Under the pieces are notes generated by a model. It searched no databases. It saw only the letters and a program-made list of their open reading frames with translations, and was not told the origin of the DNA. This document shows, piece by piece, positions 6,189-52,392 of a DNA stretch of 64,000 nucleotides; position 1 is the first letter of the stretch, and each line of letters opens with the position of its first letter. The translations under genes and the position numbers were made by a program. This stretch comes from Laetmonice hystrix (taxonomy: Eukaryota). The stretch is taken from positions 8,494,001 to 8,558,000 of the forward strand of contig OZ249445.1 in NCBI GenBank assembly GCA_965235115.1. The letters are read 5' to 3'.

Positions 6189-6919
6189 GCAGATCTAACG
6201 GTGTAGAGTGTACCTGCTGAGGACAACTGTAAGGTCTACTTATCGAATCCGACACAGCAGATCTCTCGGTGTGCAGTGTACGAGTCTGCTGAGGACAACT
6301 GCAAGGTCTACTTATCGAACCCGACACAACAGATCTAACGGTGTGCAGTGTACACAACAGATCTAACGGTGTGCAGTGTACACAACAGATCTAACGGTGT
6401 GCAATGTACGAGTCTGCTGAGGACAACTGCAAGGTCTACTTATCGAATCCGACACAGCAGATCTCACGGTGTGCAGTGTATACAACAGATCTAATGGTGT
6501 GCAGTGTACGAGCCTGCTGAGGACAACTGCAAGGTCTACTTATCGAATCCGACACAGCAGATCTATAACGGTGTGCAGTGTACGAGCCTGCTGAGGACAA
6601 CTGCAAGGTCTACTTATCGAATCCGACACAGCAGATCTAACGGTGTGCAGTGTACGAGCCTGCTGAGGACAACTTTATAAGGTCTACTTATCGAATCCGA
6701 CACAGCAGATCTCACGGTGTGCAGTGTACGAGCCTGCTGAGGACAACTGCAAGGTCTACTTATCGAATCCGACACAGCAGATCTAACGGTGTGCAGTGTA
6801 CGAGCCTGCTGAGGACAACTGCAAGGTCTACTTATCGAATCCGACACAGCAGATCTAACGGTGTGCAGTGTACGAGCCTGCTGAGGACAACTGCAAGGTC
6901 TACTTATCGAATCCGACAC
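6189..6919. repeat. Compound minisatellite: nine ~72-bp units with three 28-bp truncated units
   Basis: Unit GCAGATCTAACGGTGTGCAGTGTACGAGCCTGCTGAGGACAACTGCAAGGTCTACTTATCGAATCCGACACA. Short units (ACAGATCTAACGGTGTGCAGTGTACACA) match its first part. Confidence 0.95.
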
Positions 6920-10970: not shown

Positions 10971-11188
10971 NNNNNNNNNNNNNNNNNNNNNNNNNNNNNN
11001 NNNNNNNNNNNNNNNNNNNNNNNNNNNNNNNNNNNNNNNNNNNNNNNNNNNNNNNNNNNNNNNNNNNNNNNNNNNNNNNNNNNNNNNNNNNNNNNNNNNN
11101 NNNNNNNNNNNNNNNNNNNNNNNNNNNNNNNNNNNNNNNNNNNNNNNNNNNNNNNNNNNNNNNNNNNNNNNNNNNNNNNNNNNNNNNN
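10971..11188. other. Assembly gap (218 N)
   Basis: Run of N. Confidence 1.
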
Positions 11189-24562: not shown

Positions 24563-25295
24563 CTGCAAGGATACGTATTTATCATTATCTAATTTTATAA
24601 GTTTCCTGAAGGTTTGTGTAAATAAGTTCTTAGATTGTACTGCTTTTGTACTGTGGTTATTAGGAATTGCTTTTACAAACTAAAGGAGGAACTCTAATAT
24701 AGTTTTTTAAGTAAAAAACATCTTTAACCAGTAACTTTGACTGCCCACAATAAATAAACACATAAAGACAAAACTACACCCACAGGAAAATTATATTTGC
24801 TTAACTGAAATTAGAGGAAGATTCAACAACAGGCCCAAAAATAGAGTTGGTAGCTGACTGTCCTGCATACTGTCAATGAGTAGAAAAATCAATCCTGGAC
24901 CCTTTGACTACATAAAGTCACTCACAATAAATCATAACACATTTACTTAAATTTAGCATCACTATGAAAATTGATTGAATCAGTACAGATGGCCAGCAAA
25001 CCATCAATATTAACTTAAATACAAGGGCAAAGGTGGGGGAAAAACTACAAGACTCTCTTATCACCATCTCTCATACCAATGAAGATGTGATACCAATATA
25101 TCTGCATGAATACTAAAAAGATATTTGATGGCTTTAAAAGACGCCTAGCCAACGAATACTTGTACAAAGATCTACAATGGGTATTTTTACATGGATCACA
25201 GGCATATAAATAACTTTTAACAAAGATACAAGTTGATATAGTTCATATCTCTCCTTGTTCCAACTGCTATCTCTCAGGGTGGTTCATATGTAAAA

Positions 25296-32624: not shown

Positions 32625-32906
32625 CTGTCAAAAAGAAATTGCCATTCAAAACTGGCGTTGACAACATAAGATGAACCTATAAGTATATCTCAACATATCG
32701 TTTCTTGACATGTTGGTGAATAAAATTTAAAAAGCCAAACCTACACAAAGTAGGTTTGTCCCTCATTTAAAACCGGTTACCCAAAAATATTAAAACATGA
32801 GGGAACAAGCCTTATTGATAAAGACTCATACAAACAAAAGTTTCTTCTTGGTGGAAGCTGAACTCCAACATCCATAACATAAGTTATCTCACAGAAGAGC
32901 ACCAAC

Positions 32907-33082
32907 CTCCTTTTGCGTTTAGTGCCTGCGTCACTGTCCGAGTTGCTGTCTGAGCTGCTATCAGCTGAACTGTCCGAGTCCGAGCTAGAGCTAGAGCCAG
33001 AACTTGAACTATCTGATACAATGGGTGTAGGTTTACTAAGGTCCACTTTGTCTGCAATAGCAGCTAGGTCTGGATGATGAAC
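32907..33082 (-). CDS. JMJD6: JMJD6 coding exon 8 (poly-Ser region)
   Basis: TTTCAG acceptor; VHHPDLAAIADKVDL...SSSSGSSSSSDSDSS...KRKR; AG|GTTGG donor. Confidence 0.88.
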
Positions 33083-33241
33083 CTGAAATGATGAGGAAAT
33101 GCGATTTTTCTTACAATATTAGAAATTGGAAAAAACATCATTCAATGTAGATTAGTATGCAGTAAGTTAAAACACCTTCGAGAAGAAATTTATACATGAC
33201 TTGCTTTAGCATTTATTTAAAGTTAAATGATATTACCTTAA

Positions 33242-33581
33242 AGGTGCTATTCGTCTCGCACAGAATGGCGTTTCTTCTATCATACATTGTGCACATAGTA
33301 CTAGAAAAAATTCCTACCGATACCATTGGCCTGATAAACCTTCTATTAGTTTGTGTACAGCATTTGAAACCTATCTCGGTGCGCACCGAGATAGAGCCAT
33401 TTCCTATGGTGGGGCGTGTCAGGGTCTCCACAGGCCTTCTGATAGAGCCCCATTTGTGCCGTTATCCATAACAAATTTTGATTTCCTTTGTTGTGAAGCT
33501 ATTTCCATGATAGGTGGGATCACATAAACGCCAACAAAATTAAAAATAAAAAAATTGAACTTTTTTTCACAAATAGCACCT
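33242..33581. mobile_element. Non-autonomous Kolobok-type DNA transposon (340 bp) in JMJD6 intron 7
   Basis: TTAA at 33238-33241 and 33582-33585 flank inverted ends AGGTGCTATT(C/T)GT / ACAAATAGCACCT. TTAA duplication with purine-purine termini fits Kolobok better than piggyBac (CCY termini). Confidence 0.78.
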
Positions 33582-33747
33582 TTAAAGTCGAAATTTGTTG
33601 AGGCTCCATGGAGCTTCTCACTGGCTTGTTTACTCCTACTGAGGAAGCAATGGCGACATGTTTCTTCACCATGTATTACGGGTACTTCATATAATGTACA
33701 TTGACATGCTTGGCCCAGTTTGGACCTGGGCACTTGACACAACCTAC

Positions 33748-33936
33748 TCTGAGAGCTTTGAGCCACTTCTTGGAGAGTTTGGGACGGCCACGTACTGTCT
33801 TGTGCCACACAATTGGGAAGTTTGTACGACTACAAAAATTCTGCGTGACTGCAACTGTTTCATCCATGTTGAGGACAACATGCCACCAGCCTCCAGGAAC
33901 AAACACAGTCTCCCCTGGACCCTGCAGGATCTCAAG
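33748..33936 (-). CDS. JMJD6: JMJD6 coding exon 7
   Basis: [23 protein letters not shown]...[11 protein letters not shown]: third Fe(II) ligand His and the GRP motif; canonical AG/GT. Confidence 0.96.
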
Positions 33937-34344
33937 CTGCCAATGATAACACAAGTACTGTCACAATTTGATCAGCAGAGAGGCTGCCAGATGGAACAGC
34001 CTGGCAGGACATGGTCCTGAATGGTACACAATATACCCAGCCCAATACTATCAAAAGTCAATAACTAAAACAATGTTATTATCTTGGGTAATGGCCTAGA
34101 TCATATCACTAAATCAAATCTTCTTTCCCACTAAAGCAAGTTATAACATATCAACATGTAAAATATTAAACTTTTCAGTCTCTTATATTTGTGCAAATTT
34201 AATGTGGTATAATTATATCGAGCCCTAAATAGAGTGTGCAACACTTCAACATTATTTGCATGTTTCATAGTGTTTAAAATTCCATCAGAGGTGCTGGAGA
34301 TGCTTGACGTCTGGTGAACATTACACCATGTATCGTCCACTTAC

Positions 34345-34492
34345 AGGTTTATAAAGGCTGGGCCAATCTGGGGCCTGTGTGCGTGGGTAGACGTAACGAA
34401 ACCATGTGATGGCCTCGTCGCGGTGCTTCCACCCCTCCCCTGGACGAACCTTGAGCAATTCTTTAGGTGTCTCCGTTGGAAACAAGCACCAC
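34345..34492 (-). CDS. JMJD6: JMJD6 coding exon 6
   Basis: [15 protein letters not shown]...EAITWF...PRTQAPDWP; canonical splice sites. Confidence 0.95.
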
Positions 34493-34741
34493 CTGGGGTA
34501 CAGAAACAGAAGCAAGCAGATGTGACCATATTGATCCAGATAGATACTTTTGTAATGTGTTTTTTGTTCATAAAATATACTTACCACATGGAAAGAGGGT
34601 ATTTAGGTGGACCAGGAAATCAAAGACCATGGGTTCTAAATGACTTTAACTTATGAATTTATTGTTGACATTACAAACAAAAATTTGGCCTTGGCCATAA
34701 AGAGGAATTTCTGTGCCTGAATAGGTGCAAAAACATGCTCA

Positions 34742-34885
<144 letters not shown>

Positions 34886-35129
34886 TTACACTCCCATGTA
34901 GAGAGTCCCGTGGCAGCAGTGATATTTTAAAGGTTTAAACAGAAACATCTAGCATGTGTTTACCCAAGTATTTGAAATATAACATGCACAACACACTAAC
35001 TTTAGAAGGAATGCAATTGGAAATCCCTACTATCTGGCATAATAACATAAACATGACATGATCATGGCGGGGATGAGGTCAGTAACATTATACATGCCGC
35101 ATGACATTTACGCAGATAATGTACTTCAC

Positions 35130-35230
35130 CTGTAAGGGGGACGTTTTTCCTCTCCTGCATACTTAAATAGGTCATCGCGAAAATATTTTGGAACTTCATA
35201 GTCCTCAAGTATTTTACGCCTCTTTGCATG
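35130..35230 (-). CDS. JMJD6: JMJD6 coding exon 4
   Basis: [34 protein letters not shown]; canonical splice sites. Confidence 0.95.
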
Positions 35231-35460
35231 CTGGAATAAATCAGAGGAAATCAGGAATTTTCATAGATACAGCCATTCATACAGGTGAATCAACATTCCT
35301 GAAAAGGATCCAGTGCTTAGATTTTGGACATTCAATGAGATTACACTGAATTGGTCACAGGAGAACATGTTTCTATAATAACCGTTTTACTCTAGATCCT
35401 TTACATCGATCTTTACATATTTTATCTTAGCTGAGAAACCTTATAAAGTGCAACACATAC

Positions 35461-35613
35461 CTCTCCAAAGCTGCTGTCAAATATATACAAAGGGCTATCG
35501 TCCCTCATTGACTCCATGTATGATGTGAAATATTTCATCTTTAACTTCACTGAATACCCGTCATCATCCTCTCCACATTTAAACTTTTGATTCCTATATT
35601 TCTTTTTGAGACG
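35461..35613 (-). CDS. JMJD6: JMJD6 coding exon 3
   Basis: [28 protein letters not shown]...[14 protein letters not shown]; canonical splice sites. Confidence 0.97.
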
Positions 35614-35874
35614 CTGCAAAAAGGGTATTCATCAACAACATTCAACTTTTTTTCCAGACAATGCCAATATTGGACAACAAACTCTTCAGTTACTTTATAG
35701 ATAATTTTCTGTGGTATCAGTCTACCAAGTTGATAAATGAAGTTAACGTAATTAAAAAAAACCCAGTAGTTACTAACGGGTAGTTACATGATGGAAAAAA
35801 ACCCACTTATTTTCCCTATGTACATATATCTTCCCTACTGTCTTTATCAGAATCACCAACATGTATCACTTTAC

Positions 35875-36089
35875 CTCCTTTGTCCATTTAAGGTTGGCTT
35901 TCCAATCATCTTGGAAATTGGTCACAACCACTGGTCTATAGACTTTCTCATACTTTTCTATGAATTCTTCCATTGTCACCTTGCGGCAATCAATTCTAGG
36001 CATTGCATCCCGTCTTTTGATTGGCTCCAGGTCCAGACTAAAGGTGTTGGAGTAGTCCATTTTATGCCAGCCATGATGCTCCTTGAGTT
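35875..36089 (-). CDS. JMJD6: JMJD6 coding exon 2
   Basis: ELKEHHGWHKMDY...EEFIEKYEKVYRPVV...WKANLKWTKE; TTTCAG acceptor, GAG|GTAAAG donor. Confidence 0.93.
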
Positions 36090-36269
36090 CTGAAACATAG
36101 GTTATATCCAACGGGGTCAGGCAGTGACTTACCATCAGCTTACCATCCTCAGTAACAGACGGGTGACCCACTGCCACTGGTGGGTCACAGATCTCTGGCA
36201 CTGTTTCAGGTGTTCCCTGGAGTGTCTTCGGTTTCTTCTTTACAAATTTACAAGTTATAACTTTCAAAG

Positions 36270-36488
36270 TGGTTATTCTGCCGTCAGACGGCAGAATAAA
36301 TAAATTAGTTTGACTAAACAATGTGTTTGAGTTAGGGTAAAGGTTAGGCCTAGGGTTAGTGTTAGTTTAGTCCCAAAATTGTTAATTAGGAACTAATTAG
36401 ATAATCCGGTATTCTGCCATCAGACATCATCCAATAAGAATCCAGTATTGCAGTCACATGACCCATCCATAGGCCGGCAGAATAACCA
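36270..36488. mobile_element. MITE-like element with telomere-like internal repeats in JMJD6 intron 1
   Basis: Perfect 14-bp inverted ends TGGTTATTCTGCCG / CGGCAGAATAACCA, with degenerate TTAGGG-like units at about 36329-36370. Confidence 0.75.
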
Positions 36489-37037
36489 TAAGCATAACTG
36501 TATGTCAAATGATGATCATGTCAGTGACAGCAGTTACTAGAGTTAGCAAGTGTCATCATTGACACTGGACTGGATAAGTTAAACCACAAATGTCATTGTC
36601 CTAGAAAAGATGATAGGCAACGGTTACCCACCGACTGTAAGTCTAAACTGAGGCTAAAAAGGAACCACTCACTCACCCACAGCCTCTGGCAGTCTGGGCC
36701 AATTTGGTCAGTGAGCGAGCGAGACAGCAGGGAACTTTAAATAGCTCAAGCCGTGTGGGCGATAATGGGGGCAGTGACGCTGTTTTACAAGGTGGAATGA
36801 TCTTCTCACATTTTCCAAAATATTGTTCAACAAACCTCAAGACCATTACCGAGAAAGGACATTTTTCATAGACCATTTGTGTATTAAACTAAGGTTTAAT
36901 TGAAGCAATGATTGCTTGCTTTCTGGATTAAACTACATTTGATTAGACGTACTCCAACAAGTCAGAGTAGCGAAGCTGCTAGCTCGGCGAGTCTCGGATC
37001 TCCTACTCCTACCGTCAAACACCAATCAATCACTAAC

Positions 37038-37092
37038 CTGGCCTGGCTCGATCTTTAGCCTCTCTTATTCTTTTACGTGACCTTTTATCCAT
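37038..37092 (-). CDS. JMJD6: JMJD6 coding exon 1 (bifunctional arginine demethylase / lysyl-hydroxylase)
   Basis: MDKRSRKRIREAKDRARP matches the JMJD6 N-terminus; G|GTTAGT donor. The nine exons total 1272 nt = 423 aa + stop, with consistent phases. Confidence 0.93.
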
Positions 37093-37199
37093 TCCTAGAA
37101 CACGATCATAATAGAATCTACGACAAATATGTCGATCAAATGTAGATAGTGTGACCGACACCTCTTCGCCCTCTGCTTCACTGCGCCACAACCCTAGAG

Positions 37200-37262
37200 C
37201 TACTTCTGCGCATGCTCTACCTCACAGGTGCTGTTTACTTGGGCCCCCGAGCACGTGGTGTG
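37200..37262. promoter_or_regulatory. Probable JMJD6 proximal promoter
   Basis: CpG-rich patch 110-170 bp upstream of the ATG, with an NRF1-like TGCGCATGC (37207-37215) and an E-box CACGTG. Confidence 0.4.
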
Positions 37263-38205
37263 GACGCACGTACGCCCATCCCGTCCAGGGGGGGGGGGGG
37301 GGGGGGGGCTTCAGTGGCAGGAGAGACAGAAAAGTAAAATTAAGAAATGTGTAGGTTGGGACCAGCGTGGGTTCCTGGACTGGGGGGGGGGGGGGCGAGT
37401 TTTCCGAAATTTATTAAATTGCCAAATATAATAAATTATAATAGGCCCTATATATTTTTGGAGGGGGCCAATGCCCCCCCCCCCCCACCACCACCACCTG
37501 GATCCGCCGATGGTTAGGTGGGTGGCAAGGCCTAAACTGGCGTGAAAGCCAGTGCCCCAGGGAGTGTGTGTGTGTGGGGGGGGGGGGGGAGCGTGAGCCC
37601 ATTTCCAAGCAAACACCCTCATCCCTGTTCTTTTTACTTCTGCCAGCAATGAGACTCGCCACCCATAGATCAAGGTCATGGTGTTGATGAGGGCTTAACT
37701 TTCCAACTTACAGATTTAACTGAACACATCACAAATAAAATGTAACGGCCGGCTCCACATTCAGTCTAGCTACTTGATATGACTTCCACTGATGGTTGGT
37801 ATTAGAACACTGATTATGCGGGGGGGGGGGGGGGGGTAGTGTATTGATGACAAAGGCGTACACGGTTTGTTGTGAAGGACAAGGCATGGGCGGATCCAGG
37901 ATTTGGTAAGGGGGGGGGGGTTGAGGGGGGGGGGATTTACTTTGGGGGTTGGTAGCATGGTCAAATCAAATCAAATCTATACGGAGAAAAAGACAAATTG
38001 GCTGCCTATAGGGGGATTTAACACCCTGCCCCCGATCCCTCACCGAACAGTTGTAACACCAAGAACACTATCCACAAATGAAGAACAGCAACTGGTTGTT
38101 AAAACACATTATATTTATTAAACACATCGAGTGATTCTGGTCTATGTACACTTTGTTGTTGGTTTTCTTCTCTAATGCCACCTGCATCGGCCATTAACCC
38201 TCGGA

Positions 38206-41387: not shown

Positions 41388-44300
41388 TCACAAAGCCCCC
41401 AGGCAGAAGGCCTCATGCTGGTTGTAGGTCCAATTGTCTGTGAATACCTCCCCACATGCACAAGTATACAGTCCCATGGAAGAAGACATCCACGCATTAT
41501 TCCCGTGACCTGATTCATCCCCGGAGGACCCTGGAGTCCGAGGTCCCCGAGGTGACTTATGCTGCATCATACGTTTCTCTTCCATAGCTTGCATCGATTC
41601 CCAGAGAGCACTACTAATCTGGGGGTCGCGGGAAGGTGTGCGCATGCTTTTCCAACCTCCTGCACTATGCTGTAGGGAGCCAGGAGCCCGAGCTCGAGGA
41701 CTCTCAGCCAAATTGCGGGGGATTCCGCCTCCTCCGCTTCCAAGAGTCGGGTTGCCTCGGTTTATCTCTTCGGTGTTACTAGGAAGTAGTTCATGGCCAT
41801 CAAAAGGTGTTCGACTGTTCAGTAAGGAGTTAACTTCATCCACATCAAATGCTGGCATTTTGGTGGGGTCAAACTCAATGGCAGAAGCAGTCAGCAAGCA
41901 ATCCATGCGATTGTCTGTACCATCGGATAGTGTTGTCGACTCGACATTTGGAACAGCTGGGTTTGCATTTTTGTCCTTCTTTTTTCGTGAGCGCGATTTC
42001 TTTTTATTTGGTGTTGGTGTTTCTTGAATGGCGCTAGGACCAGCCGTAATGAGATCTGGCTTGACGACGGGAATTCCCTCCGAGCTGGTGATGGCTTCTA
42101 GGTCACTGATGTTAAACAAGGGACTTTCCGTTCTGGTTGTCTGGTAGGAACTTGAGGTTGAGTTACACTGTGGCATGGTAAGAGTAGGCGGTGACATGGG
42201 AGATGACCCAGGCTGTATGGTGTGCTCCCCATGCACCATTGGTGGTCCAAGATGTGGGGGCTGACTCATCATGGCGTCTTCAGTGGCACCAGCTTGTACA
42301 CTGTTGATGATCGACTCCAGCGCACTGAGATCGGGAAGCCCACTGTGAACTGTGGAAACATTCATTCCAATGCTCTGCAATCCTAGCATGCTTGGTGTTG
42401 GTAAAATGTTTGTGTTTTCTGGAGCATTAATGTTCATTCCGACCAATCCATTGGCCGCACTGCTTTGTTGGCTTGCTGGTCCAAGGACTGGCTGCAGAGG
42501 TGAAGGTTGGTGATCTTCACCATTGCCGGGCCCAATAGTAGCTGGGGACATGATCTCTGAAGGCGTGCCAACTGCAGACTGGTCTGAAATCACAGACAGG
42601 AATGAATTGACGTCAATGGGTGAAGATTCTACACTGCCATCAAATATGCTGAAGGCGCCATTTCCATGTTGTTCGCCAGAATTACCAGCACTTGTTAGAC
42701 TGTCCACAATGTCAATGTGAGCTTGCGACTTGTTACTGCCTGGATCGTGCATGCTGGAACCATTAGTACGGTCCAAGAAGTCACTCTGCCCCATGAAGAA
42801 CTGGTCTGACGTGTTACTGAGAGGATTGGTGGGGTCAAACTGCTGCTGGAACCTTCGCAGCAGATCTGGCAGTGAATCATGTTGACAACACTGGCAGTCT
42901 TCCTCACAAGGCAGCTCTGGTAACCTGATGGGATCATTGATGAACCGCTGGGACAAAGGCTTCTTGGGCTCATGTTCATTGGAACACAGCTCCTTGGACT
43001 GATCAGATGTGCTTGCTGTCTCATCTGTCTTGTCGGTCTCAATACTCGGCATTTCATCACTGCGGGACTCCCCGTTGAGAATCCTTCCATCTCCATCCAA
43101 TCCTGAGGAATCCTTAGCTCCCTCCTCGTCTGAGGAATGCTCGACATCATCATCCACATCTTCATCTTCACTTTCAGATTGAACACTGTCATTACTCATC
43201 CGCCTGAAGTCATTCTGGCTTTGTTTGCTGATGTGTTTGCCAGTGCGGCCGTCACCTCCCTTAACAGCCAAATAATCTTCATCAGATATTCTGGTCTCAT
43301 CGTCATCATCATCTTCATCATCTTCATCGTAGCCATGGTTATCATGCGTCGTTCCCATACACTGCGCTGTGATGTGAATGTCCTTTCCTCTCGACATTGG
43401 CTTTGGTCCTTTGCGGCCGACTGTTGGGTGTATGGTTGGATATGGTGTCGCGTCCTCCCTGTCTGAGGTAGATGGATGACTGGACCGTGGACTGGTGAGT
43501 CCGCCCCATGGGCTCGTCGTGCTGGTGCTTCCTCTAGGGCTGGTACTGTGGCCGTGATGTGGTGTATGGTGGGGCGTGCTGGGAACGTGGTGCATTGGCC
43601 ATGCACCTGGAGGCATATGTGGTAAAGTACCCGACAACCCAGGCAAACTGAACCGTCCCATTCCTCTTGGCCGGCCACGACCACGACCCCTTCCTCGCCC
43701 TCTCCCTCTGCCTCGTCCCCGACCGCGACCTGTTCCTCGACCTACTGCTGACCCATACAGTGGACCAGGTACAAACTTGGCTGGAGCTGGGGCACTCTCA
43801 TTGTCTGAATCTTCATTGTATGTTTTAATGTTCTGGTGTGCAGCACGTGGCCGCCGTAGGGGTTCCTTGGGTGGGCCAGGCACGTCTGACTTCTCCTCTT
43901 CCTGCGAGGACTGGGCTCCATGAGAGGATCCCGCAGGGCTGAACATCTCGCCCTCGACAGGGGTGGTGCCATCAGTGAGGGCAAGCCTCCCCAAGGGTCG
44001 CTTCTGGAACAGGCGTCCTGGTGCTGAAAAAACATCCTTCCCGTCTTCATCATCGGAGTGGAAATCATAAATATGTTCATCCAGGCCCTTGTTGCTTGTT
44101 GTGGTGGTCATAGTTTTAGTTGTGTGGACAGAGGTAGTTGTAGTTGAGGAATGTGTTTCATGCTTTGTGGTAATGGTGCGCTCTATTTGTGTTGTTGAGA
44201 ACTCACGGTCATCATCATTTGAGGAGATATCTTCAATGTGGACGCTTTCCTGTCCCGTCCTGCCTCGTCCTCTGCCCCTGCCTCTTCCACGTCCACGACG

Positions 44301-47300
44301 TGGTAGAGGGACAAGAGCTTCCGTGAATTCCTCATCAGCATTGCGAGTTTTTGGTTCAGTATTGTCTGCCCCGGAGCTCTTCCAGCCACCAAGTCCTTTG
44401 ACCAGGTTCAGTTTGAGGGTCGGTTTCTTCGTCGATGGCTCTTCTTTTTCATCATCCAGATGTACATGACTTGACTTCCTTTTATGTGTTGTCACCACCT
44501 CTTCTGACTCGCTATCACCACGATGACCACTGCTAGACCGCCTGATACGGGTACTGGTTGTTTTGTATGTCTTACTGATGACCTGAGTGTGTGCTCCATG
44601 TGGCGTGTAAGATGTATCGTCTGGCTCTTCTTCGTCAGTGGAATCATTGTACGACACCTCCTTGACTGTGTCACGTAACTGCGGCGGACGATTGCGCACA
44701 CACCGGGCCTGATTTCTGTAAGCATACAAAGCACGTTCCTTTTCTAACGAATATGGGTAATTAGGAGGACTAAACGTGCCATCATCGTCATCGTCTTCGT
44801 CCTCCTTGAGATCTTCTATGGCAGGCTGTCTGGGAGTATTACCGTGGTGATGATACACGTGTTTGCGGTGGTATGTACGCTGCTCACTGTGTTCATAGGC
44901 GTCACTTTCTATGCCGGATCGCTCGACCACCTTTTCTTCCACTGTCTTTCCAATCTTCAGTTTCAGTTTGAGTGGGTCTGCCCCTGTGGCTCGTTCAACT
45001 CGTACATAGGTACGGGTTTCCACTGTGACAGTTTCATATGTAGTTTGTTCATACGACTCAGACCAGTCAGGCAGAGCCACGGCATTCGGTTGGTAGGCTG
45101 CATGGGGGGTCCACCTGTGGCTGAATCCATGCTCCTCATTCTCACTGTCCTCAAAGTCTTCATCTGGAGATTCCTCATCTCCCTTCCTTGGTTTCGTACC
45201 CCCTCTGTACTTGTAACCTAATCTCTCTGGTTTGGCAACTTGACGTTTGGGCATGACACGGACTTTGGATGCTGGCTCATCTTGCAGGGGACTTGTTTCA
45301 ATATCCTCTGGGACAGGTCTTTTTTTCGGAGGTCGACCACGGCGTTTAGATCCGGGCACATTTGACTGCATGAGTGCCTGTACCTGACTGTCGGACAAGC
45401 GCTCAAGGAGGACTGTAGGTTCACTGTTCTTGCGCGACCGCTGACCGGAGTTTGGCGACATGACTTCCTCACCATCACTGTGATCACGAACACCTGACAC
45501 ATCTGATATAAACGCACTGGAATCAGTTGACCTACTCAGGTCAGCATTGGTCGCCTCAAATGAATCTTCAGCGTAATCATTATCATCATCTGAACTGCCA
45601 GTATGTTCTCGTACTATTACACCAGGCTGTACTGGCGGCAGGTCATGGACTGAGTCCCTGGATTTCTGGTGATCATCCTTCAACTGAGGTGCAGATGATC
45701 CATAACTTTCACTTTTTTCATTATATCTGCCTGTCAGTTCATCACTTACAGACTTTCTACTTGACCTTCTCCGTCTGATTGGGGATGTCATTTCACCTTC
45801 AGTACTACATACATCCACACTGCTTGCATCATCACCAGTAGAACCCAGTGAATCAATGGATGCTCTAGAGTGACCCCGGCCTTTCCCCCGCGCTCTCCCC
45901 CGTCCTCTGGCCCGACGACTTCTACCTCGTCCCCGGGAAGGCTTAACTTCAAACTGGGGATGACCACCATGATCATCACTATGATCATCTAAGTCAGGTA
46001 TACCTTCATCAATAACCAGTGGGCCACAATCAGAATCTTGCCATGGAGAACTATCTGTGCGTGCTATGAGATCTGGAATTCTAGGCTCTTCTAAAGGTGC
46101 ACTCTTCAAGTTGATTTTGGCAGGTGTAGTGTCATCCGTTTCTACATTCTGTAGTTGACTTGATACCTGAGAGATCGATTCAACACGAGATACCTCTGAC
46201 ATGAACCCAGTGTCCACCTTTTCACCTGCATGCTGCTCTTTCACACTAGAATGTTTATGTTCACTGTACAAGTCACTGTTCTCACCTCCATATTCATTTG
46301 AAACCTCTGCTGAGTCACTGGGTCTTTCATTATCCTTACACCTATCACGATATTTATGTCTGTCTTTGTGACTCTTTTTGCTTTCTCTATGTTTTCTCTC
46401 TTTACCTTGGTGTTTCTTTCTGCTTTGAGAACAATTTTGCATTGCTAATTCTTCGCTGTCTTCTGCCTTGCCATCAGCAGAAGGTCTAAGGTCACTTTTG
46501 TCTTCTGGCTGACTTGCAGGGATGTGGCTATGAAGATCCAAGTGTCTGGAATAGATCGGACCTTCTGGTGGTGGCATTTCAGGTTTGACAGTGTCTTTCC
46601 TGTCCTCAGCCTTTGACTCCCGTTTGACCTCAGAGTCTGTGAAGGGAGGTGGCAGTGGTATGGGCGGCAATGCTGAGTGTTTGGGAGATGCTGATGGATG
46701 GGTGAACAGTCCTGGATGTCTTGGGGACATCCCCGGATGCCTTGGGGACAGGCCTGGGTGGCAAGGGGACAAACCTGGATGGGGGGACATGCCACCTGTA
46801 CGCTTCACCCGGTTAATAACAATCCTCTGTGTTTTCACAATCGTTACTCTACCACCTGGTTCACTGACTGGTACAATTTCTGTACCCCTCCTCGGAACAA
46901 GAGCACCTGTTTCATCAGTTAAAGCCCGCTTCTTTGGGGTCAAGAAAATAGACCTTTCACTGGACTTACTTTCGTTTAAACTATTCATAGCACCTTCTTT
47001 ACAAAAGACAGATTGGTCACATTGTGACTTACCGACCATTTCATTAGAGGTGGCTTTTAACAATTCATCCTTTTGGCTCAGGCTGGTACCTTTCTGGCCT
47101 GCCTGCCTTGACTGAAAACCTTCACTTTCAGAAGAAGCACCTTGATCCACTGGCGTACAACTCACTTCACCACCACTGCTGCCTAGTGCAGGTCTTGATT
47201 CACATGACGGTTGTGCAAATTTACCCTGAACTCGTGGTGCACTTCCCCCTTGGTGGGGTGTCAGAGTGTCATCACCTGTTTGACGAAGCATGTCTCGCAG

Positions 47301-50300
47301 ATCTTTAAGAGGCAAGTCTTCATCTTCTTCGACTACACCAGTAACACGACCTTCTACAGAGGACAAGGAACCTTCAGCAGCCTTAGTGCTATACATACAC
47401 TTCTGGGCCTCCCTACTCTTTGTGCATGTCTCCTCCATTTGACCATCTTCATTCTGAGACCACTTGATGGTCTCCACACCCTTCTTGATATGATTAACTG
47501 TTTTAGGTGAACCCTCACCAGCAATATGGAATTCAGTGATGGAACTCTCGGATACACACTTTGTCTCTGTTGCTTTACATTTACCAATAATACTGTCCCA
47601 CAGACATTTATTGCTGCGTCTACCCTTTTTCGGTACTAGAGCTTTCTCACTTTTAGGGGAGAGCCACAGTGGTGACGTCCCCGAACCTTGCAGAGAGGAC
47701 CTGTCCGTTGTTGAGGAATTGTCTGTATCAGAGGTTGCATCACTGGAGGTGATGCTACTTCGCCTGTTGCTATGGTTACCCAGCCTGTCTTCAGGAGCGT
47801 ATTTCCATGTGCGTTGTGGGGTGTTGGACCTGTCCTCGTCATCACTGAGTTCTTGGGGTGCTAAAAGGACTTCCCCAACCACCTTCCCATGGTTCATAAG
47901 ACGGCTGGACTCCAAACCTTCCTGCTTTACACCACTTAGACCATTACCGCTGTCCACTGCCAATCCTGTTTTTAGTTTATGAAAGTACTTATTAACATTA
48001 TCAATTCCAGGCCTGTTTTCACAATTGTTTCCCCGGTCAGAGTTTAATTGGCTGGACATTTTATTTTCCAACCTGGTAGGATTTTCAAACTCGCCCGTGA
48101 GTTCATTCAGAACAGGTCCACCCTCTTGTCTCTCCGCCTTCTCCTCCTTCACGGCAGAGACCTCCTGCCCTACTGTGCTACACCTCCGTTCCTCAAGTCC
48201 TGACGAATGCTGCTTTTTGTGAGGGAGCCTAGAATAAGGACTATCCTCGAGTCCACGTAAAGAACCCGGAGGCTCCAAACCCATGGCACTGTTAACTGCC
48301 ATCTTTTTATGTTGAACACTGTGACAACGTTTATTGGAAGAAAGAGAGGAATCAGGGTGCATATTCATTTCTTGGTAGGCATATGTCGCATAGGAACCAT
48401 TGGGGACAGTTTTATGCACTGTGTGTTCTTTACTTTGCATAACCGAGCCATCATCATCGACAAACTGACCGCCTTTCTTCCACTCAGCAACCACATTTGC
48501 AGGCAGCTTTTTAAGGACAACTTTCGGTTGAATCAACTGCTCACTGTACTTGTGCGCCTTTTGCAACCCTTCATCATTGGCTGTGCTCTCGTGGTTGCCT
48601 GCCTCGGTCATGGCACTCAGAGGTTGCTGCTTTTGGTCTTTTCTTGACACATAAGGTTCCAAGGCTGCGGCACTGTCTGCTGGAGTCTTCTCAACACCAC
48701 TAGGGATTGGTCCTGGCAAGCTGGCACTGAATGGCACAGCAGATGTCAAAAGAGCTGCCAGTTGGCTGTGACGTCGTTTTTTGGGGCCCAACATAGACTG
48801 GTCTGTTGCACTCGTTCTAGAACCATCCTCTGGCTGCGGCAGTGACTGATTTCCACTCTTAATCATAGCTTTGGCGCAAGACTCCTCGGTCTGGCAGTTG
48901 TCAACCAATGGAAACTTTTTCCAGGGACAGTTGTCATCAGCTGCAAGTGACGACTTCCTGATGTCACTCAGATGAGACATGGAAGAGGACCCATCCTGTG
49001 TTTTTCCTTCTCCTCTGTCCTGGTGTCCTCCACTGGGCAACAAGCTCTCCTGGGACATTTCGTTAGCTCCTTGCTCTCCCACAAGAAGCTGGCCACCTGA
49101 TGGACTACCTGATAACCGTACATCCACTTTCCGAGGTCGACCAACCTTTCGCTTGCACCTGCCAGCCTCCTTTCCCTCCTCCTGAGATTCACCTGATTTG
49201 GAAGACTTTTTTCCATGCTTTGGCGGCCTACTTCGGTTGATGGTTGATCCGTCTGCTGCTTGAATCTTTGGCTTCCTTCCTCGCCTCGCAGTGACCTTCT
49301 TTTCTCCAAGTACAGGCTCCTTTGGTTTTTGAACGTCAGACGGGGGCTTTGATGAGCTGCTGGTCTCTTCACTGTCACTGGCTAATGGATCGGGGAGTTC
49401 ATCTTTGTTGGCAGATCGCAGGGAATATGTGCGCGTGGGATACATATAGCGACGAGGAATCTTTTTGCGTGCCCGAATATTTGCTTTGTCATTGAGCTGT
49501 ATTTTCCGAGGCAAATTATATTCTGGTGAGTGTGCTGGACTACGACAAAAGCGGCTATAGTATGGCAGGTCACGTGTATATCGGCTACTAAATATATTAG
49601 TCGGTTTAGTCCTTTGTAATAGACGTGCTTTTTTTGTATGTCTTTCAGGACTAGTAGGGTCCTCATATGCTCTACGAAACGGAAGTTCAACATGTCGTGG
49701 ACGTTGGTAAAAGCTTGGAGCTTTGCCTAAAATCCTTTCCTTTTTTGTCATAGGCCATATTCTAGCATATTCTAATGTTCGCATTGGGCTGCCTATTGTT
49801 CGATGTGGTGTGCTGATCAACATAGGCACATCTGTAGAGTTAACTGACACTGGGTCAGTTGAGGTCAGGCTGGAACTAACACTTGAATCGGGAGGTTTCT
49901 CCACACTACACACTGGGCCATCCTGACCACTCATACCTGAACTGATGCCTGATACAGGTATGTGTGAAACTGTGTCCATCTCCAGACTACTGGAGGAACT
50001 ATCATTCTGACTTTGCACATTGGCAGTGGATAATGTTAATGATGCTGAGGATGTGGAAGATGTCATTCTACTCCCGCTGCTGCTGCTGTTGGAGTCCTGA
50101 GGCAGGAAGGAGTCACTATGCGAGTGGAGTATGGAACCCCCAGATGGCACTGTCACACATGTACTGGGGCCGTTGAGGTTAGAGAAACTGGTGATGGCTT
50201 CGTGACTGAGACTAAGCTCTGCTGCAGAGCTTGAGGCCACTGACGTCATCATGCCCGTGCTATGGCTCTTAGCTGTCTCACAAGGCTCGGAAATATGCTC

Positions 50301-51677
50301 CAGAACACTTGGAAGTCGGTCTCGAATAGTTTTATCGCGAGGATCACTCTTTTTCTCTTGTTCCCGCTCTCTCTCATGGTTATGATCACGGTCGGTGTCA
50401 TGGTCACGATTTCTTTCACGATCGTGTTCACGTTTGTGTTCACGATACCTGTCATGATCATGAAGTCTTTCATGGTGTTCCCATTTATGACTATGGTCAG
50501 AACCACGGTTTGCCTCATGATTATGTTCATGCTCCTTATTTTGGTCATGACTGTGATTTCGCTGGTCATGCTCATGATTTCTGCTGCGATCACGTTCAAG
50601 TTTATGATCTTTTTCACGTTCTCGATCACGGTCACGCTCCCTGCCATGGTCGTGAATACGTTCTCTTTCACGGTCCCGATCATGACCATCACGTGTTGAA
50701 GTGAACAAATATGGTTTGGATGTGGCTGGAAGTCTTTCTCGAGAGACTGACTCCTTGTAGCTGGAGGATGATGTACTTGTATGGCATGGAGGTGTTCGCA
50801 CTGGAGGGGAGCGCTGCACTGCTCTTTCGGTTGGGGTTCGCGCTCTACGTTCTGCTCTCTCTTCCTCTTCTTTTGAATCACTGTAGGATCGTCGAGCAGC
50901 ATTTCGCTCCTTTTTCTCCTCCTCTCTGCGGCTCTCCTCCAGTCGAAGTGCTTCCTGTCGGAGGCCATGCAGATGAGCAGCGAATGCTGGAAAATGTAGG
51001 TGGGGGTAGTAGGCCATTTCTGTCGGGAACCCTCGCTCGTCCCCAGGCTTCATGTGACGCATGGACATTTCTCGTAGGCTCGCCATGTTGAGGTTGTCAA
51101 GATTTGGGGGCCGCCAGAAACCACCAGGATAGTGTGCAAAGAATTCTGGCCTCATTTGTGCCAAATGGGCGTTGTGTGGATGTGCAGCTGCTGCTGCAGC
51201 TGCAGCAGCTGCTGCAGCTGCCAAGTTCTCCCGCCCTTGCATTTCCAGGGCAGCGGCACGCTCCTTGGCTACGAGCTCAACAATGTTGGTCGGTCCCGGT
51301 GGGAGAAGTCCCGGGATTGGTGGCGGGCGTGCCATGTCGTGGGTGGGAAAGATACTGTTGGCGCGCGACATGCACACGGCCTGAACAAAGTCGTGCTTGC
51401 TCTGGTCCACCCAAGGTTGGGAGACTGACGTCTTGCTCCGTAGATCCAAAACAGATGCTAAAGATGCTGATGTGGCAATATCTGCCCTTGGTACAGGTAC
51501 AATAACACTGGATGACAAGTGATTTGAGTTGCAGTCGGCCGAAGAGGAATCCTTCGCCTCACCATTTCTTTCACTACTGCCCATTTCTCGCCGATCTCGC
51601 TCTCTTTCTCTCTCACGGTCTCGTTCTCGCGCATCCCTCTTCTTGTCGCCACCATTGCCACTTCCTGGCTCCGACAT
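41388..51677 (-). CDS. Uncharacterised 3429-aa low-complexity nuclear-type protein (AT-hooks, RG repeats, C-terminal C2HC-like finger), encoded by one exon
   Basis: 10,290-nt uninterrupted ORF. An in-frame TGA lies shortly upstream of the ATG and a TTTTGCAG acceptor at about 51815 bounds the exon. It has RE/RD runs, poly-Ala, His-rich and acidic tracts, RRGRKP/GRPRK/RRGRPP motifs, and ends YTCACGEVFTDNWTYNQHEAFC. Confidence 0.88.
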   Translation of the reverse strand: MSEPGSGNGGDKKRDARERDRERERERDRREMGSSERNGEAKDSSSADCNSNHLSSSVIVPVPRADIATSASLASVLDLRSKTSVSQPWVDQSKHDFVQAVCMSRANSIFPTHDMARPPPIPGLLPPGPTNIVELVAKERAAALEMQGRENLAAAAAAAAAAAAAHPHNAHLAQMRPEFFAHYPGGFWRPPNLDNLNMASLREMSMRHMKPGDERGFPTEMAYYPHLHFPAFAAHLHGLRQEALRLEESRREEEKKERNAARRSYSDSKEEEERAERRARTPTERAVQRSPPVRTPPCHTSTSSSSYKESVSRERLPATSKPYLFTSTRDGHDRDRERERIHDHGRERDRDREREKDHKLERDRSRNHEHDQRNHSHDQNKEHEHNHEANRGSDHSHKWEHHERLHDHDRYREHKREHDRERNRDHDTDRDHNHEREREQEKKSDPRDKTIRDRLPSVLEHISEPCETAKSHSTGMMTSVASSSAAELSLSHEAITSFSNLNGPSTCVTVPSGGSILHSHSDSFLPQDSNSSSSGSRMTSSTSSASLTLSTANVQSQNDSSSSSLEMDTVSHIPVSGISSGMSGQDGPVCSVEKPPDSSVSSSLTSTDPVSVNSTDVPMLISTPHRTIGSPMRTLEYARIWPMTKKERILGKAPSFYQRPRHVELPFRRAYEDPTSPERHTKKARLLQRTKPTNIFSSRYTRDLPYYSRFCRSPAHSPEYNLPRKIQLNDKANIRARKKIPRRYMYPTRTYSLRSANKDELPDPLASDSEETSSSSKPPSDVQKPKEPVLGEKKVTARRGRKPKIQAADGSTINRSRPPKHGKKSSKSGESQEEGKEAGRCKRKVGRPRKVDVRLSGSPSGGQLLVGEQGANEMSQESLLPSGGHQDRGEGKTQDGSSSMSHLSDIRKSSLAADDNCPWKKFPLVDNCQTEESCAKAMIKSGNQSLPQPEDGSRTSATDQSMLGPKKRRHSQLAALLTSAVPFSASLPGPIPSGVEKTPADSAAALEPYVSRKDQKQQPLSAMTEAGNHESTANDEGLQKAHKYSEQLIQPKVVLKKLPANVVAEWKKGGQFVDDDGSVMQSKEHTVHKTVPNGSYATYAYQEMNMHPDSSLSSNKRCHSVQHKKMAVNSAMGLEPPGSLRGLEDSPYSRLPHKKQHSSGLEERRCSTVGQEVSAVKEEKAERQEGGPVLNELTGEFENPTRLENKMSSQLNSDRGNNCENRPGIDNVNKYFHKLKTGLAVDSGNGLSGVKQEGLESSRLMNHGKVVGEVLLAPQELSDDEDRSNTPQRTWKYAPEDRLGNHSNRRSSITSSDATSDTDNSSTTDRSSLQGSGTSPLWLSPKSEKALVPKKGRRSNKCLWDSIIGKCKATETKCVSESSITEFHIAGEGSPKTVNHIKKGVETIKWSQNEDGQMEETCTKSREAQKCMYSTKAAEGSLSSVEGRVTGVVEEDEDLPLKDLRDMLRQTGDDTLTPHQGGSAPRVQGKFAQPSCESRPALGSSGGEVSCTPVDQGASSESEGFQSRQAGQKGTSLSQKDELLKATSNEMVGKSQCDQSVFCKEGAMNSLNESKSSERSIFLTPKKRALTDETGALVPRRGTEIVPVSEPGGRVTIVKTQRIVINRVKRTGGMSPHPGLSPCHPGLSPRHPGMSPRHPGLFTHPSASPKHSALPPIPLPPPFTDSEVKRESKAEDRKDTVKPEMPPPEGPIYSRHLDLHSHIPASQPEDKSDLRPSADGKAEDSEELAMQNCSQSRKKHQGKERKHRESKKSHKDRHKYRDRCKDNERPSDSAEVSNEYGGENSDLYSEHKHSSVKEQHAGEKVDTGFMSEVSRVESISQVSSQLQNVETDDTTPAKINLKSAPLEEPRIPDLIARTDSSPWQDSDCGPLVIDEGIPDLDDHSDDHGGHPQFEVKPSRGRGRSRRARGRGRARGKGRGHSRASIDSLGSTGDDASSVDVCSTEGEMTSPIRRRRSSRKSVSDELTGRYNEKSESYGSSAPQLKDDHQKSRDSVHDLPPVQPGVIVREHTGSSDDDNDYAEDSFEATNADLSRSTDSSAFISDVSGVRDHSDGEEVMSPNSGQRSRKNSEPTVLLERLSDSQVQALMQSNVPGSKRRGRPPKKRPVPEDIETSPLQDEPASKVRVMPKRQVAKPERLGYKYRGGTKPRKGDEESPDEDFEDSENEEHGFSHRWTPHAAYQPNAVALPDWSESYEQTTYETVTVETRTYVRVERATGADPLKLKLKIGKTVEEKVVERSGIESDAYEHSEQRTYHRKHVYHHHGNTPRQPAIEDLKEDEDDDDDGTFSPPNYPYSLEKERALYAYRNQARCVRNRPPQLRDTVKEVSYNDSTDEEEPDDTSYTPHGAHTQVISKTYKTTSTRIRRSSSGHRGDSESEEVVTTHKRKSSHVHLDDEKEEPSTKKPTLKLNLVKGLGGWKSSGADNTEPKTRNADEEFTEALVPLPRRGRGRGRGRGRGRTGQESVHIEDISSNDDDREFSTTQIERTITTKHETHSSTTTTSVHTTKTMTTTTSNKGLDEHIYDFHSDDEDGKDVFSAPGRLFQKRPLGRLALTDGTTPVEGEMFSPAGSSHGAQSSQEEEKSDVPGPPKEPLRRPRAAHQNIKTYNEDSDNESAPAPAKFVPGPLYGSAVGRGTGRGRGRGRGRGRGRGRGRGRPRGMGRFSLPGLSGTLPHMPPGAWPMHHVPSTPHHTPHHGHSTSPRGSTSTTSPWGGLTSPRSSHPSTSDREDATPYPTIHPTVGRKGPKPMSRGKDIHITAQCMGTTHDNHGYDEDDEDDDDDETRISDEDYLAVKGGDGRTGKHISKQSQNDFRRMSNDSVQSESEDEDVDDDVEHSSDEEGAKDSSGLDGDGRILNGESRSDEMPSIETDKTDETASTSDQSKELCSNEHEPKKPLSQRFINDPIRLPELPCEEDCQCCQHDSLPDLLRRFQQQFDPTNPLSNTSDQFFMGQSDFLDRTNGSSMHDPGSNKSQAHIDIVDSLTSAGNSGEQHGNGAFSIFDGSVESSPIDVNSFLSVISDQSAVGTPSEIMSPATIGPGNGEDHQPSPLQPVLGPASQQSSAANGLVGMNINAPENTNILPTPSMLGLQSIGMNVSTVHSGLPDLSALESIINSVQAGATEDAMMSQPPHLGPPMVHGEHTIQPGSSPMSPPTLTMPQCNSTSSSYQTTRTESPLFNISDLEAITSSEGIPVVKPDLITAGPSAIQETPTPNKKKSRSRKKKDKNANPAVPNVESTTLSDGTDNRMDCLLTASAIEFDPTKMPAFDVDEVNSLLNSRTPFDGHELLPSNTEEINRGNPTLGSGGGGIPRNLAESPRARAPGSLQHSAGGWKSMRTPSRDPQISSALWESMQAMEEKRMMQHKSPRGPRTPGSSGDESGHGNNAWMSSSMGLYTCACGEVFTDNWTYNQHEAFCLGAL

Positions 51678-52392
51678 TCCGCGAGCACGCTGACCTTGAT
51701 GCTGGGATCAGCCGAAGCCGCGGCGCGTTGATGTCAACATGGATGTGGAACAAGAGGGTTGGTCATGGTAGACAAAGTCAGGCCGGCTGGGCTGAGCACT
51801 ACATGATGGCTCGTTCTGCAAAACATAACATAAGGTAACATGAGAACTAACTCGTCTTGCTTTAATTTTATTCTTTTGTGTGTTTTGGGGGGAGGGAAGT
51901 GTAATAGAAATAACAGTGTAACAGTGTAACAGTGCTGGATCTTAAGTTTTTTACTAACAAGCCAGTCCGGCTTGTACCTTAAAAAAGTTACTAGCTCGAC
52001 ATAGTCCGAAAACCAAATGGGAAAGTAACAAAAAACTATAATGTAAACAAGAAGAAACATGTGGAAAGGATGTTTTTCAATAATAAATAATTGATCACAG
52101 CTTGAATCTTGAGTAACCAGTAACTTTACAAAAATAGATGCAATTTTGGTCCGAATTTTCTACAAGCCACCAGGGCATATGATTTTGGCATTTTAAGGTG
52201 CCCGGAATGAAACTTAGGAGCCAATGGCGTCCAGGCATGTGTTCAGTTCCCGCACTAATGTAATTGATAATCAATATAATCAATATAATAATACACTATC
52301 CACCCCGGCACCATTTATAAACACATATTTTTTTAATATACTGGCACATGTAATGCAGCTGTACAGTTTATAAACACCCTGTTTCAGACTTA

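What the first reader, a model, noticed from the sequence alone, without database searches (positions are those of the whole stretch)
41388..51677. Giant single-exon orphan protein (3429 aa) with almost no folded domain
A 10.3-kb stop-free frame must be maintained by selection, yet I see no globular domain apart from a terminal 22-aa C-x-C...H-x3-C finger. It has at least three AT-hook-type motifs (about 49280, 49135, 45335), three RG runs (about 45880-45935, 44260-44300, 43660-43745), RE/RD/His blocks and acidic tracts. This is the profile of a condensate-forming chromatin scaffold. The N-terminus is compositionally like atrophin/GSE1/AUTS2 proteins, but I cannot find their signature motifs.
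Basis: partly seen in the sequence, partly recalled or inferred. Interest (0 to 1): 0.7.

Follow-up and report, generated by a model that had tools for sequence, protein, structure and literature searches.

The report
Giant disordered nuclear-type scaffold gene
This is a real gene, kept by selection, for a 3,429-residue, almost wholly unfolded protein written in one coding exon; at least two other invertebrate species carry it, so it is an unnamed conserved family and not an orphan, and its role as a DNA/RNA-tethered docking scaffold in the nucleus is inferred from short motifs only.

Summary
Window 41388-51677 (-) is one stop-free frame of 3,429 codons, against at most 252 in shuffles. It is non-repetitive and has no Pfam domain.

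"Orphan" is wrong. A 14-kb scaffold from another organism (L005) carries a collinear gene of about 3,240 aa in three coding exons. Global identity is 24%, with about 20 conserved islands and a nearly invariant terminal finger. A third species holds a fragment (P0001).

Sixteen SNPs in the sample's own reads split 11 synonymous to 5 non-synonymous (pN/pS about 0.13), with no indels. Selection therefore still acts, on the spacers too.

AlphaFold gives only short helices and a ββα finger.

No named family matches. Auts2, Atrophin-1 and every other Pfam model fail, three word-index searches were blank, and a phmmer search of 1.84 billion representatives found only those fragments.

The most likely function is a nuclear scaffold that binds DNA through AT-hooks and RNA or Tudor-domain proteins through RG runs. 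This is inferred, and condensate formation is untested. No RNA data exist, so splicing is also untested. Giant one-exon disordered genes are common in this probably annelid genome. Interest is modest.

The parts
41388..51677 (-). Complete coding sequence, 3429 aa, one uninterrupted exon; stop at 41388-41390 followed by two more stops
51678..51815 (-). Probable 5' UTR part of the giant exon, preceded by a pyrimidine tract plus CAG that looks like a 3' splice acceptor (untested); in-frame stop 10 codons upstream of the ATG
   Evidence: sequence reading only
51438..51545 (-). Conserved block 1, aa 45-80: ADCNSNH..S.VI.PVP ... LDL
50823..50993 (-). Highly charged single long helix, aa 229-285 (pLDDT 78-95)
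50343..50687 (-). RD/RE/His-rich block, aa 331-445; an RD/RE block lies at the same place in the relative
49389..49802 (-). Conserved block 2, aa 626-763: SP.RT.EY, PMTKKERILG, EDP.SPERHTKKAR.L, a bipartite basic (NLS-like) cluster, YMYPTRT..LRSA
49125..49289 (-). Two AT-hook-type motifs, RRGRKPK (degenerate) and KRKVGRPRKV; the relative has RGRGRPGRGKK at the matching place just after block 2
45873..45935 (-). RG run 1, aa 1915-1935
44925..45398 (-). Conserved block 3, aa 2094-2251: canonical AT-hook KRRGRPPKKRP (45318-45350), RV.P.RQV..PERL.Y, P.K.KLK.G..VEEK.V
44259..44300 (-). RG run 2, aa 2460-2473
43662..43745 (-). RG run 3, aa 2645-2672, ending in GRPR; an RG run lies at the same place in the relative
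42540..42929 (-). Conserved block 4, aa 2917-3046: IR.PELPCEED, LPDLL (LxxLL-type, predicted helix), SSP.DVNSFL, IMSP
41970..42008 (-). Basic cluster NKKKSRSRKKKDK, aa 3224-3236 (NLS-like), kept in the relative
41397..41918 (-). Conserved block 5, aa 3254-3427: DN.MD.LL, FD..ELL, W..M helix, WM..SMGLY
41403..41468 (-). Terminal C2HC finger YTCACGEVFTDNWTYNQHEAFC (C-x-C-x12-H-x3-C), predicted ββα, pLDDT about 70; 18 of 22 residues identical in the relative

Best explanation
This is a genuine, single-copy protein-coding gene whose whole 3,429-aa product is encoded in one exon. The product belongs to an unnamed, conserved family of giant intrinsically disordered proteins. About a third of the residues lie in roughly 20 short conserved islands, which are linear motifs and short helices, separated by fast-evolving but still constrained spacers. 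The protein ends in a single classical-type ββα C2HC zinc finger.

The most likely mode of action is a nuclear scaffold or co-regulator. All the following steps are inferred. Conserved basic clusters import it into the nucleus. Two or three AT-hooks tether it to the minor groove of AT-rich DNA. Three RG runs bind RNA and/or serve as arginine-methylation sites read by Tudor-domain proteins. The conserved blocks (PMTKKERILG / SPERHTKKARIL, PELPCEED-LPDLL, FD..ELL and the terminal finger) dock partner proteins. The long charged spacers give reach and multivalency.

Shown: the gene is real, selected and conserved in layout, and it lacks a globular domain. Inferred: localisation, DNA/RNA binding and partners. 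Condensate formation is possible but wholly untested.
For: Gene reality and selection.
- The open frame has 3429 codons, against a maximum of 252 in shuffles.
- The gene is single-copy in its 627-Mb genome.
- Contigs from the sample's own reads span 6 kb of the frame with no indel and no joint. They carry 16 SNPs, 11 synonymous and 5 non-synonymous. pN/pS is about 0.13 (P=1e-4). Outside the conserved islands the split is 8 to 5 (P=0.003).

Conservation.
- phmmer of aa 55-1000 against 1.84 billion representatives hits P0001 (E=1.9e-8) and P0002 (E=1.7e-6) on block 2.
- Scaffold L005 carries a collinear gene of about 3,239 aa in three exons whose frames join across GT-AG introns.
- tblastn E-values against L005 are 3e-20, 8e-17, 3e-12, 1e-5 and 6e-4 for five blocks in the same order.
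- Global identity is 24%, with 20 islands.
- P0001 and P0002 are 60% identical overall and nearly identical in block 2, so they come from two further species.

Disorder.
- No Pfam domain is found.
- FoldIndex predicts 78% of positions unfolded.
- AlphaFold2 mean pLDDT is 38.5 for the C-terminus and 54 for the N-terminus; only helices and the ββα finger are modelled.

Nuclear and nucleic-acid motifs shared by both proteins.
- An AT-hook lies just after block 2 in both proteins.
- An RG run lies at the same place in both (giant aa ~2650 / relative aa ~2552); both proteins have further RG runs.
- A bipartite basic cluster lies inside block 2.
- A basic cluster lies about 200 aa before the C-terminus.
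- RG dipeptides number 75 against 39 expected.
Against: There is no RNA evidence of any kind: no RNA run holds the locus. Expression, the transcript's ends and any internal splicing are therefore unknown. All functional statements rest on short motifs that also arise by chance in arginine-, glycine- and lysine-rich disordered sequence. The second canonical AT-hook (aa 2114) is not conserved at its position in the relative, which has a plain basic cluster there. The AlphaFold runs used one or two sequences, so low confidence is weak evidence for disorder. The three word-index searches see only certain length ranges, and the collection does not hold this genome's own proteins. 'No named relative' is therefore partly a statement about database coverage.
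Confidence: 0.55

Rival explanations
1. It is the highly diverged lophotrochozoan orthologue of a named disordered co-repressor scaffold (AUTS2/FBRSL1/Tay bridge, atrophin/RERE, GSE1 or similar), with sequence drifted beyond pairwise detection.
For: For the N-terminal 400 aa the Atlas feature search ranks AUTS2, FBRSL1 and atrophin-1 clusters first (score 0.83). The RE/RD repeats, His-rich tract, poly-Ala and Pro-rich N-terminus resemble those proteins in composition.
Against: A score of 0.83 is below the level the tool treats as more than a lead; a third of shuffled proteins reach 0.8. The Pfam models Auts2, Atrophin-1 and the GSE1 domain do not match, even at a reporting limit of E=10, on the isolated N-terminal piece. 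phmmer of aa 55-1000 against 1.84 billion representatives found no such protein. To my knowledge (not tested here) none of those families ends in a zinc finger.
Confidence: 0.15
2. It is an RNA-processing or nuclear-body scaffold (in the manner of SRRM2, SON or ZC3H13) acting mainly on RNA, with the AT-hook-like motifs being incidental basic patches.
For: There are three long RG runs, one conserved in position. RD/RE repeats are typical of splicing-associated proteins: the only other phmmer hit, P0003, is an RD-rich protein matched by composition. A single terminal zinc finger could bind RNA.
Against: There is no RS domain: RS/SR dipeptides number 52 against 68 expected from composition, and the longest RS run is 4 residues. 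No RRM, G-patch, CCCH or other RNA-binding domain is found. A canonical RGRP AT-hook is kept at the same place in the relative.
Confidence: 0.2
3. The long frame is not translated as a whole. Mature transcripts splice out most of it, or the ORF is a non-functional relic, and only a few blocks are used.
For: No RNA data are available. The relative's gene does contain introns.
Against: In the relative the introns are short (about 140-180 nt) and lie between coding exons. Its third exon is itself a 2,451-codon open frame collinear with this one. SNPs outside the conserved islands are still biased to synonymous changes (8 to 5, P=0.003), and no indel is seen in 6 kb. Codon-position composition is uniform along the ORF.
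Confidence: 0.05

Closest known systems
AUTS2 / FBRSL1 / Drosophila Tay bridge and atrophin/RERE co-repressor scaffolds
   Same: Large, mostly disordered nuclear proteins with RE/RD repeats, His-rich and Pro-rich tracts. They are the nearest neighbours of the N-terminal 400 aa by language-model features.
   Different: No Auts2 or Atrophin-1 domain is detected. This protein is about three times longer and carries AT-hooks, RG runs and a terminal C2HC finger that, to my knowledge (not tested here), those families lack. The resemblance is compositional only.
AT-hook proteins encoded largely by one exon (AHDC1/Gibbin, PRR12, TCF20/RAI1) - comparison from general knowledge
   Same: They are long disordered chromatin-associated proteins with a few AT-hooks, and most of the coding sequence lies in one large exon.
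   Different: No Pfam model of any kind reached even E=1 on the whole protein apart from the weak finger match, so their family domains are absent. No sequence similarity was found in any search.
Classical ββα zinc fingers of the C2HC subtype (Pfam PF22992, BIRD-IDD fourth finger, is the best but sub-threshold match)
   Same: The C...C-x12-H-x3-C ligand pattern. Phe and an aromatic residue sit at the canonical hydrophobic positions. A ββα fold is predicted.
   Different: Only one residue separates the first two cysteines, where two to four are usual. The Pfam score is 19.4 bits against a cut-off of 26.3. It is a lone finger at the extreme C-terminus, so sequence-specific DNA reading by an array is unlikely.
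Other giant one-exon disordered genes noted earlier in this same genome (earlier AI note s1-344605, 6,124 aa)
   Same: Same genome and same style: a non-repetitive, domain-free giant coding exon, also reported as kept in two other genomes.
   Different: It is a different locus. I have not seen its sequence or compared it with this one, but (aa 1-300) found only one borderline RE/RD-rich match (E 0.0097) and (last 533 aa) found nothing beyond self in this genome.

Membership tests
AUTS2 / FBRSL1 / Tay bridge | Auts2 family domain (Pfam PF15336) | tested here: not met
   hmmscan of the whole protein (limit E=1) and of the isolated N-terminal piece aa 60-300 (limit E=10) returns no Auts2 match. 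There is only a feature-space lead of 0.83.
Atrophin / RERE | Atrophin-1 domain (PF03154); for RERE also BAH, ELM2, SANT and GATA | tested here: not met
   None of these Pfam models is matched.
GSE1 | GSE1 family domain in Pfam | tested here: not met
   There is no Pfam match other than the weak finger.
AT-hook-bearing proteins (a motif class, not a family) | G-R-P core flanked by Lys/Arg | tested here: met
   KRKVGRPRKV (aa 841-851) and KRRGRPPKKRP (aa 2110-2120) are canonical, and RRGRKPK (aa 797-805) is degenerate. The relative has RGRGRPGRGKK at the place matching the first pair. DNA binding itself was not tested.
Classical C2H2/C2HC ββα zinc finger | Four zinc ligands with a 12-residue spacer, conserved hydrophobic core residues, ββα fold | tested here: inconclusive
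   The pattern C-x-C-x12-H-x3-C has Phe at +4 and Tyr at +10. AlphaFold2 models two short strands plus a helix at pLDDT of about 70. 18 of 22 residues are identical in the relative. Pfam PF22992 scores only 19.4 bits against a cut-off of 26.3, and the CxC spacing is atypical.
SR-related speckle scaffolds (SRRM2 / SON type) | Extended RS-dipeptide domain | tested here: not met
   There are 52 RS/SR dipeptides against 68 expected from composition, and the longest run is 4 residues.
The unnamed family defined here (giant protein, L005 gene, P0001, P0002/P0004) | Collinear blocks 1-5 and the terminal SMGLYTC.CG.VFTDNW...QHEAFC finger | tested here: met
   Five collinear tblastn blocks have E-values from 6e-4 to 3e-20. 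The global alignment shows 20 islands. Block 2 is present in three species.

The most novel reading that the evidence does not exclude
This is a previously undescribed family, possibly restricted to the Lophotrochozoa, of chromatin or RNA scaffolds of about 3,300 aa. Its function would lie wholly in about six short docking blocks and a lone terminal C2HC finger strung on constrained disordered spacers. It could be the functional counterpart in these animals of atrophin/AUTS2-type co-regulator platforms.
Probability: 0.3. Interest if true: 0.45.

Novelty: new member of a known kind. Interest (0 to 1): 0.3.

Why it matters
The result shows that the giant stop-free frame is a working, selected gene with homologues, not a one-off oddity. 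It also gives the family a usable definition: five collinear blocks plus a nearly invariant terminal finger. With that definition the gene can be found and annotated in other invertebrate genomes, where gene predictors and protein databases currently miss it.

The selection signal on the poorly conserved spacers is a small but concrete example of constraint on disordered sequence that is not visible as sequence conservation.

Beyond that, the finding is ordinary for this genome, in which several giant one-exon disordered genes have been noted. Nothing here opens a long-standing question.

Tried and rejected
1. The search for homologous proteins on the whole length, on aa 3250-3429 for candidates of 1886-6000 aa, and on the last 77 aa for candidates of 592-1883 aa. 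All three were blank. The collection does not hold this genome's proteins, so a blank is weak evidence.
2. The exact look-up of the L005 2,420-aa product failed. The cause may only be that the reference translates its GTG start differently, so the result is uninformative.
3. Atlas searches. The N-terminus gave only a compositional AUTS2/atrophin lead. The C-terminus gave generic zinc-finger clusters at 0.86-0.88. Block 3 gave no usable hit.
4. The metagenome scan with the C-terminal block found only another record of the same relative (L008, identical to part of L005).
5. PDB sequence searches with the finger region and with the block 2 profile found nothing meaningful.
6. A paper search for the relatives' accession numbers and for comparable proteins gave no lead.
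7. I looked for the JMJD6 neighbour next to the relative's gene. A tblastx of the flanks found nothing, but those flanks are only about 2 kb long.
8. I considered CtBP (PxDLS), PPxY and PP1 (SILK/RVxF) motifs. None is conserved between the two proteins in a form that fits the consensus.
9. The retrocopy idea: there is no parent or paralogue in the genome.
10. I did not run complex prediction, because no specific partner is claimed.

Full report
**What is there**

The minus strand of window 41388-51677 is one open reading frame of 3,429 codons starting with ATG. It is the only ORF of at least 300 aa in the region. The coding frame has no internal stop, while the other five frames have 87 to 343 stops. 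In 200 shuffles of the same bases the longest stop-free run averaged 135 codons and never exceeded 252. First-position GC exceeds third-position GC in every 500-codon bin. The frame is not built from repeats. Tandem Repeats Finder reports only six small arrays of at most 45 nt, and only 1.3% of hexapeptides recur.

The protein is rich in Ser, Glu, Arg, Pro, Gly and Asp.
- AT-hook-type motifs at aa 797-805, 841-851 and 2110-2120
- RG runs at aa 1915-1935, 2460-2473 and 2645-2672
- an RD/RE/His block at aa 331-445
- acidic tracts
- a terminal finger, YTCACGEVFTDNWTYNQHEAFC, at aa 3404-3425

**No folded domain**

- **Pfam:** the only match is a sub-threshold hit of the finger to a C2HC model (19.4 bits against a cut-off of 26.3).
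- **FoldIndex:** a charge-hydropathy FoldIndex predicts 78% of positions unfolded.
- **AlphaFold2, C-terminus:** the last 534 aa, run with the relative as alignment, give mean pLDDT 38.5. The only structure is short helices over conserved motifs and a ββα finger at pLDDT of about 70.
- **AlphaFold2, N-terminus:** the first 330 aa give mean pLDDT 54, with two charged single helices (aa 13-33 and 229-285) and no compact fold.

Both alignments were very shallow, so this supports disorder but does not prove it.

**It is not an orphan**

A phmmer search of aa 55-1000 against 1.84 billion cluster representatives found two true hits, P0001 (E=1.9e-8) and P0002 (E=1.7e-6). Both match aa 650-810 of the giant protein. 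A third hit, P0003, is an RD-rich protein matched by composition.

P0001 and P0002 are ORF fragments called on short contigs of two assemblies filed as metagenomes. A longer copy of the P0002 locus lies on a 14.2-kb scaffold, L005. A tblastn of the giant protein against L005 gives five blocks in the same order:

| Block | Giant protein aa | E-value |
|---|---|---|
| 1 | 45-80 | 6e-4 |
| 2 | 598-763 | 8e-17 |
| 3 | 2094-2251 | 1e-5 |
| 4 | 2917-3046 | 3e-12 |
| 5 | 3254-3427 | 3e-20 |

The L005 gene has three coding exons. Two short GT-AG introns join the frames exactly, and the third exon alone is a 2,451-codon open frame. The assembled model is about 3,239 aa. It aligns end to end with the giant protein at 24% identity, with about 20 islands covering a third of the residues.

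The two proteins end at almost the same place. The last 30 residues, WM..SMGLYTC.CG.VFTDNW...QHEAFC.G, are nearly invariant.

P0001 and P0002 are 60% identical overall but nearly identical in block 2, so they come from two different species. The family therefore exists in at least three species. The genome itself holds no paralogue.

**Selection today**

Contigs built from three public runs of one sample, probably the sample the assembly came from, cover 41388-47387 without any indel or joint. They differ from the window at 16 positions. Eleven changes are synonymous and five are not, against 23% synonymous sites. This gives pN/pS of about 0.13 (P=1e-4).

Outside the conserved islands the split is still 8 to 5 (P=0.003), and none of the five replacements falls in an island. 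The sample is small and no correction was made for transition bias. Even so, the direction is clear: the spacers are read as protein too.

**Gene model**

- **C-terminus:** the stop is genuine, because the relative ends within a few residues of it.
- **Start:** the start is M1 or possibly M32. The relative starts 27 residues before block 1.
- **Possible 5' UTR intron:** about 138 nt upstream of the ATG there is a pyrimidine tract ending in CAG that looks like a splice acceptor. The gene may therefore have a non-coding first exon, and 'single coding exon' is the safe wording.
- **RNA evidence:** no RNA run holds the locus, so expression and splicing could not be tested.

**Neighbours**

A complete JMJD6-type gene (exons between 32780 and 37221, minus strand) lies 4.2 kb downstream. 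The relative's scaffold is too short to test synteny.

**What it probably does**

The following features are shared by the two proteins at matching places:
- a canonical RGRP AT-hook just after block 2
- an RG run about 780 residues before the C-terminus
- a bipartite basic cluster inside block 2
- a basic cluster about 200 residues before the C-terminus
- an RD/RE block near the N-terminus

RG dipeptides are twice as frequent as composition predicts. RS dipeptides are below expectation, so this is not an SR-type protein.

The conserved blocks look like docking motifs:
- a doubled TKK.R[IL]L element in block 2
- PELPCEED followed by an LxxLL-type helix in block 4
- DN.MD.LL and FD..ELL acidic-hydrophobic elements in block 5
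- the lone terminal finger

My best reading is a nuclear scaffold or co-regulator. It would be tethered to AT-rich DNA by its AT-hooks and to RNA or Tudor-domain proteins by its RG runs, and it would carry partners on the conserved blocks. Every step of that mechanism is inference from motifs. Condensate formation is possible for such a protein, but nothing here tests it.

**Comparison with known families**

- **Compositional resemblance only:** the N-terminus resembles AUTS2/FBRSL1 and atrophin by language-model features, at a score (0.83) that the tool itself treats as a lead only.
- **Named families tested:** the Auts2, Atrophin-1 and GSE1 Pfam models do not match, so I do not file it under any of them.
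- **Database searches:** three word-index searches covering candidate lengths of 592-6000 aa were blank. The collection lacks this genome's own proteins, so coverage of this animal group is poor and absence elsewhere is not shown.
- **Host organism:** earlier AI notes on this genome call it a polychaete or annelid worm, and they report another giant one-exon disordered gene that is also kept in two other genomes. I did not verify the taxon.

**Verdict**

- **Gene status:** it is a real, selected, single-copy gene.
- **Family:** it belongs to an unnamed family defined by five collinear blocks and a terminal C2HC finger.
- **Function:** it is plausibly nuclear and bound to nucleic acid.
confirmed.
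refuted.
reasonable but untested.

As a kind of thing (a large disordered AT-hook/RG scaffold mostly in one exon) it is familiar. As a family it is new to the databases I could reach. Interest is modest.

Noticed in passing
window 19994-24568 (-): A second giant open frame of 1,524 aa. It starts with KSP/SPKK-type repeats, holds several C2H2 fingers (Pfam zf-C2H2, E=9e-8), an internal duplicated segment of about 60 aa and an APSK repeat run. Another first-stage note covers its 5' part (s1-317307).
   Followed up: partly
window 32780-37221 (-): A complete JMJD6-type gene in at least seven exons, directly downstream of the giant gene on the same strand. Its tail exon is Ser/Asp-rich.
   Followed up: partly
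window 14423-16288 (+): An intronless 621-aa BTB-BACK-Kelch gene (BTB E=3e-24, Kelch_1 E=1e-21).
   Followed up: partly
window 3452-4042 (-): An exon encoding a signal peptide and the start of a periplasmic-binding-type (class C GPCR or receptor-like) ligand-binding domain, judged by eye only.
   Followed up: no
window 6650-7027 (+): An ORF made of about four tandem copies of a 23-aa unit (STYRIRHSRSNGVQCTSLLRTTAR), that is, a tandem repeat of about 69 nt.
   Followed up: no
window 37225-37970: A Pro/Gly-run low-complexity stretch (PPPPPP / GGGG in opposite frames) just upstream of the JMJD6 first exon.
   Followed up: no
window 51790-51796 (-): A minimal upstream ORF (ATG followed at once by TAG) in the presumed 5' UTR of the giant gene.
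   Followed up: no
L005 2470-2650 and 4790-4931: The relative's gene has two short GT-AG introns inside the coding sequence at places where this genome's gene is continuous. This means intron loss here or gain there.
   Followed up: partly
window 10971-11188: An N run of 218 bases (assembly gap or mask), left untouched.
   Followed up: no
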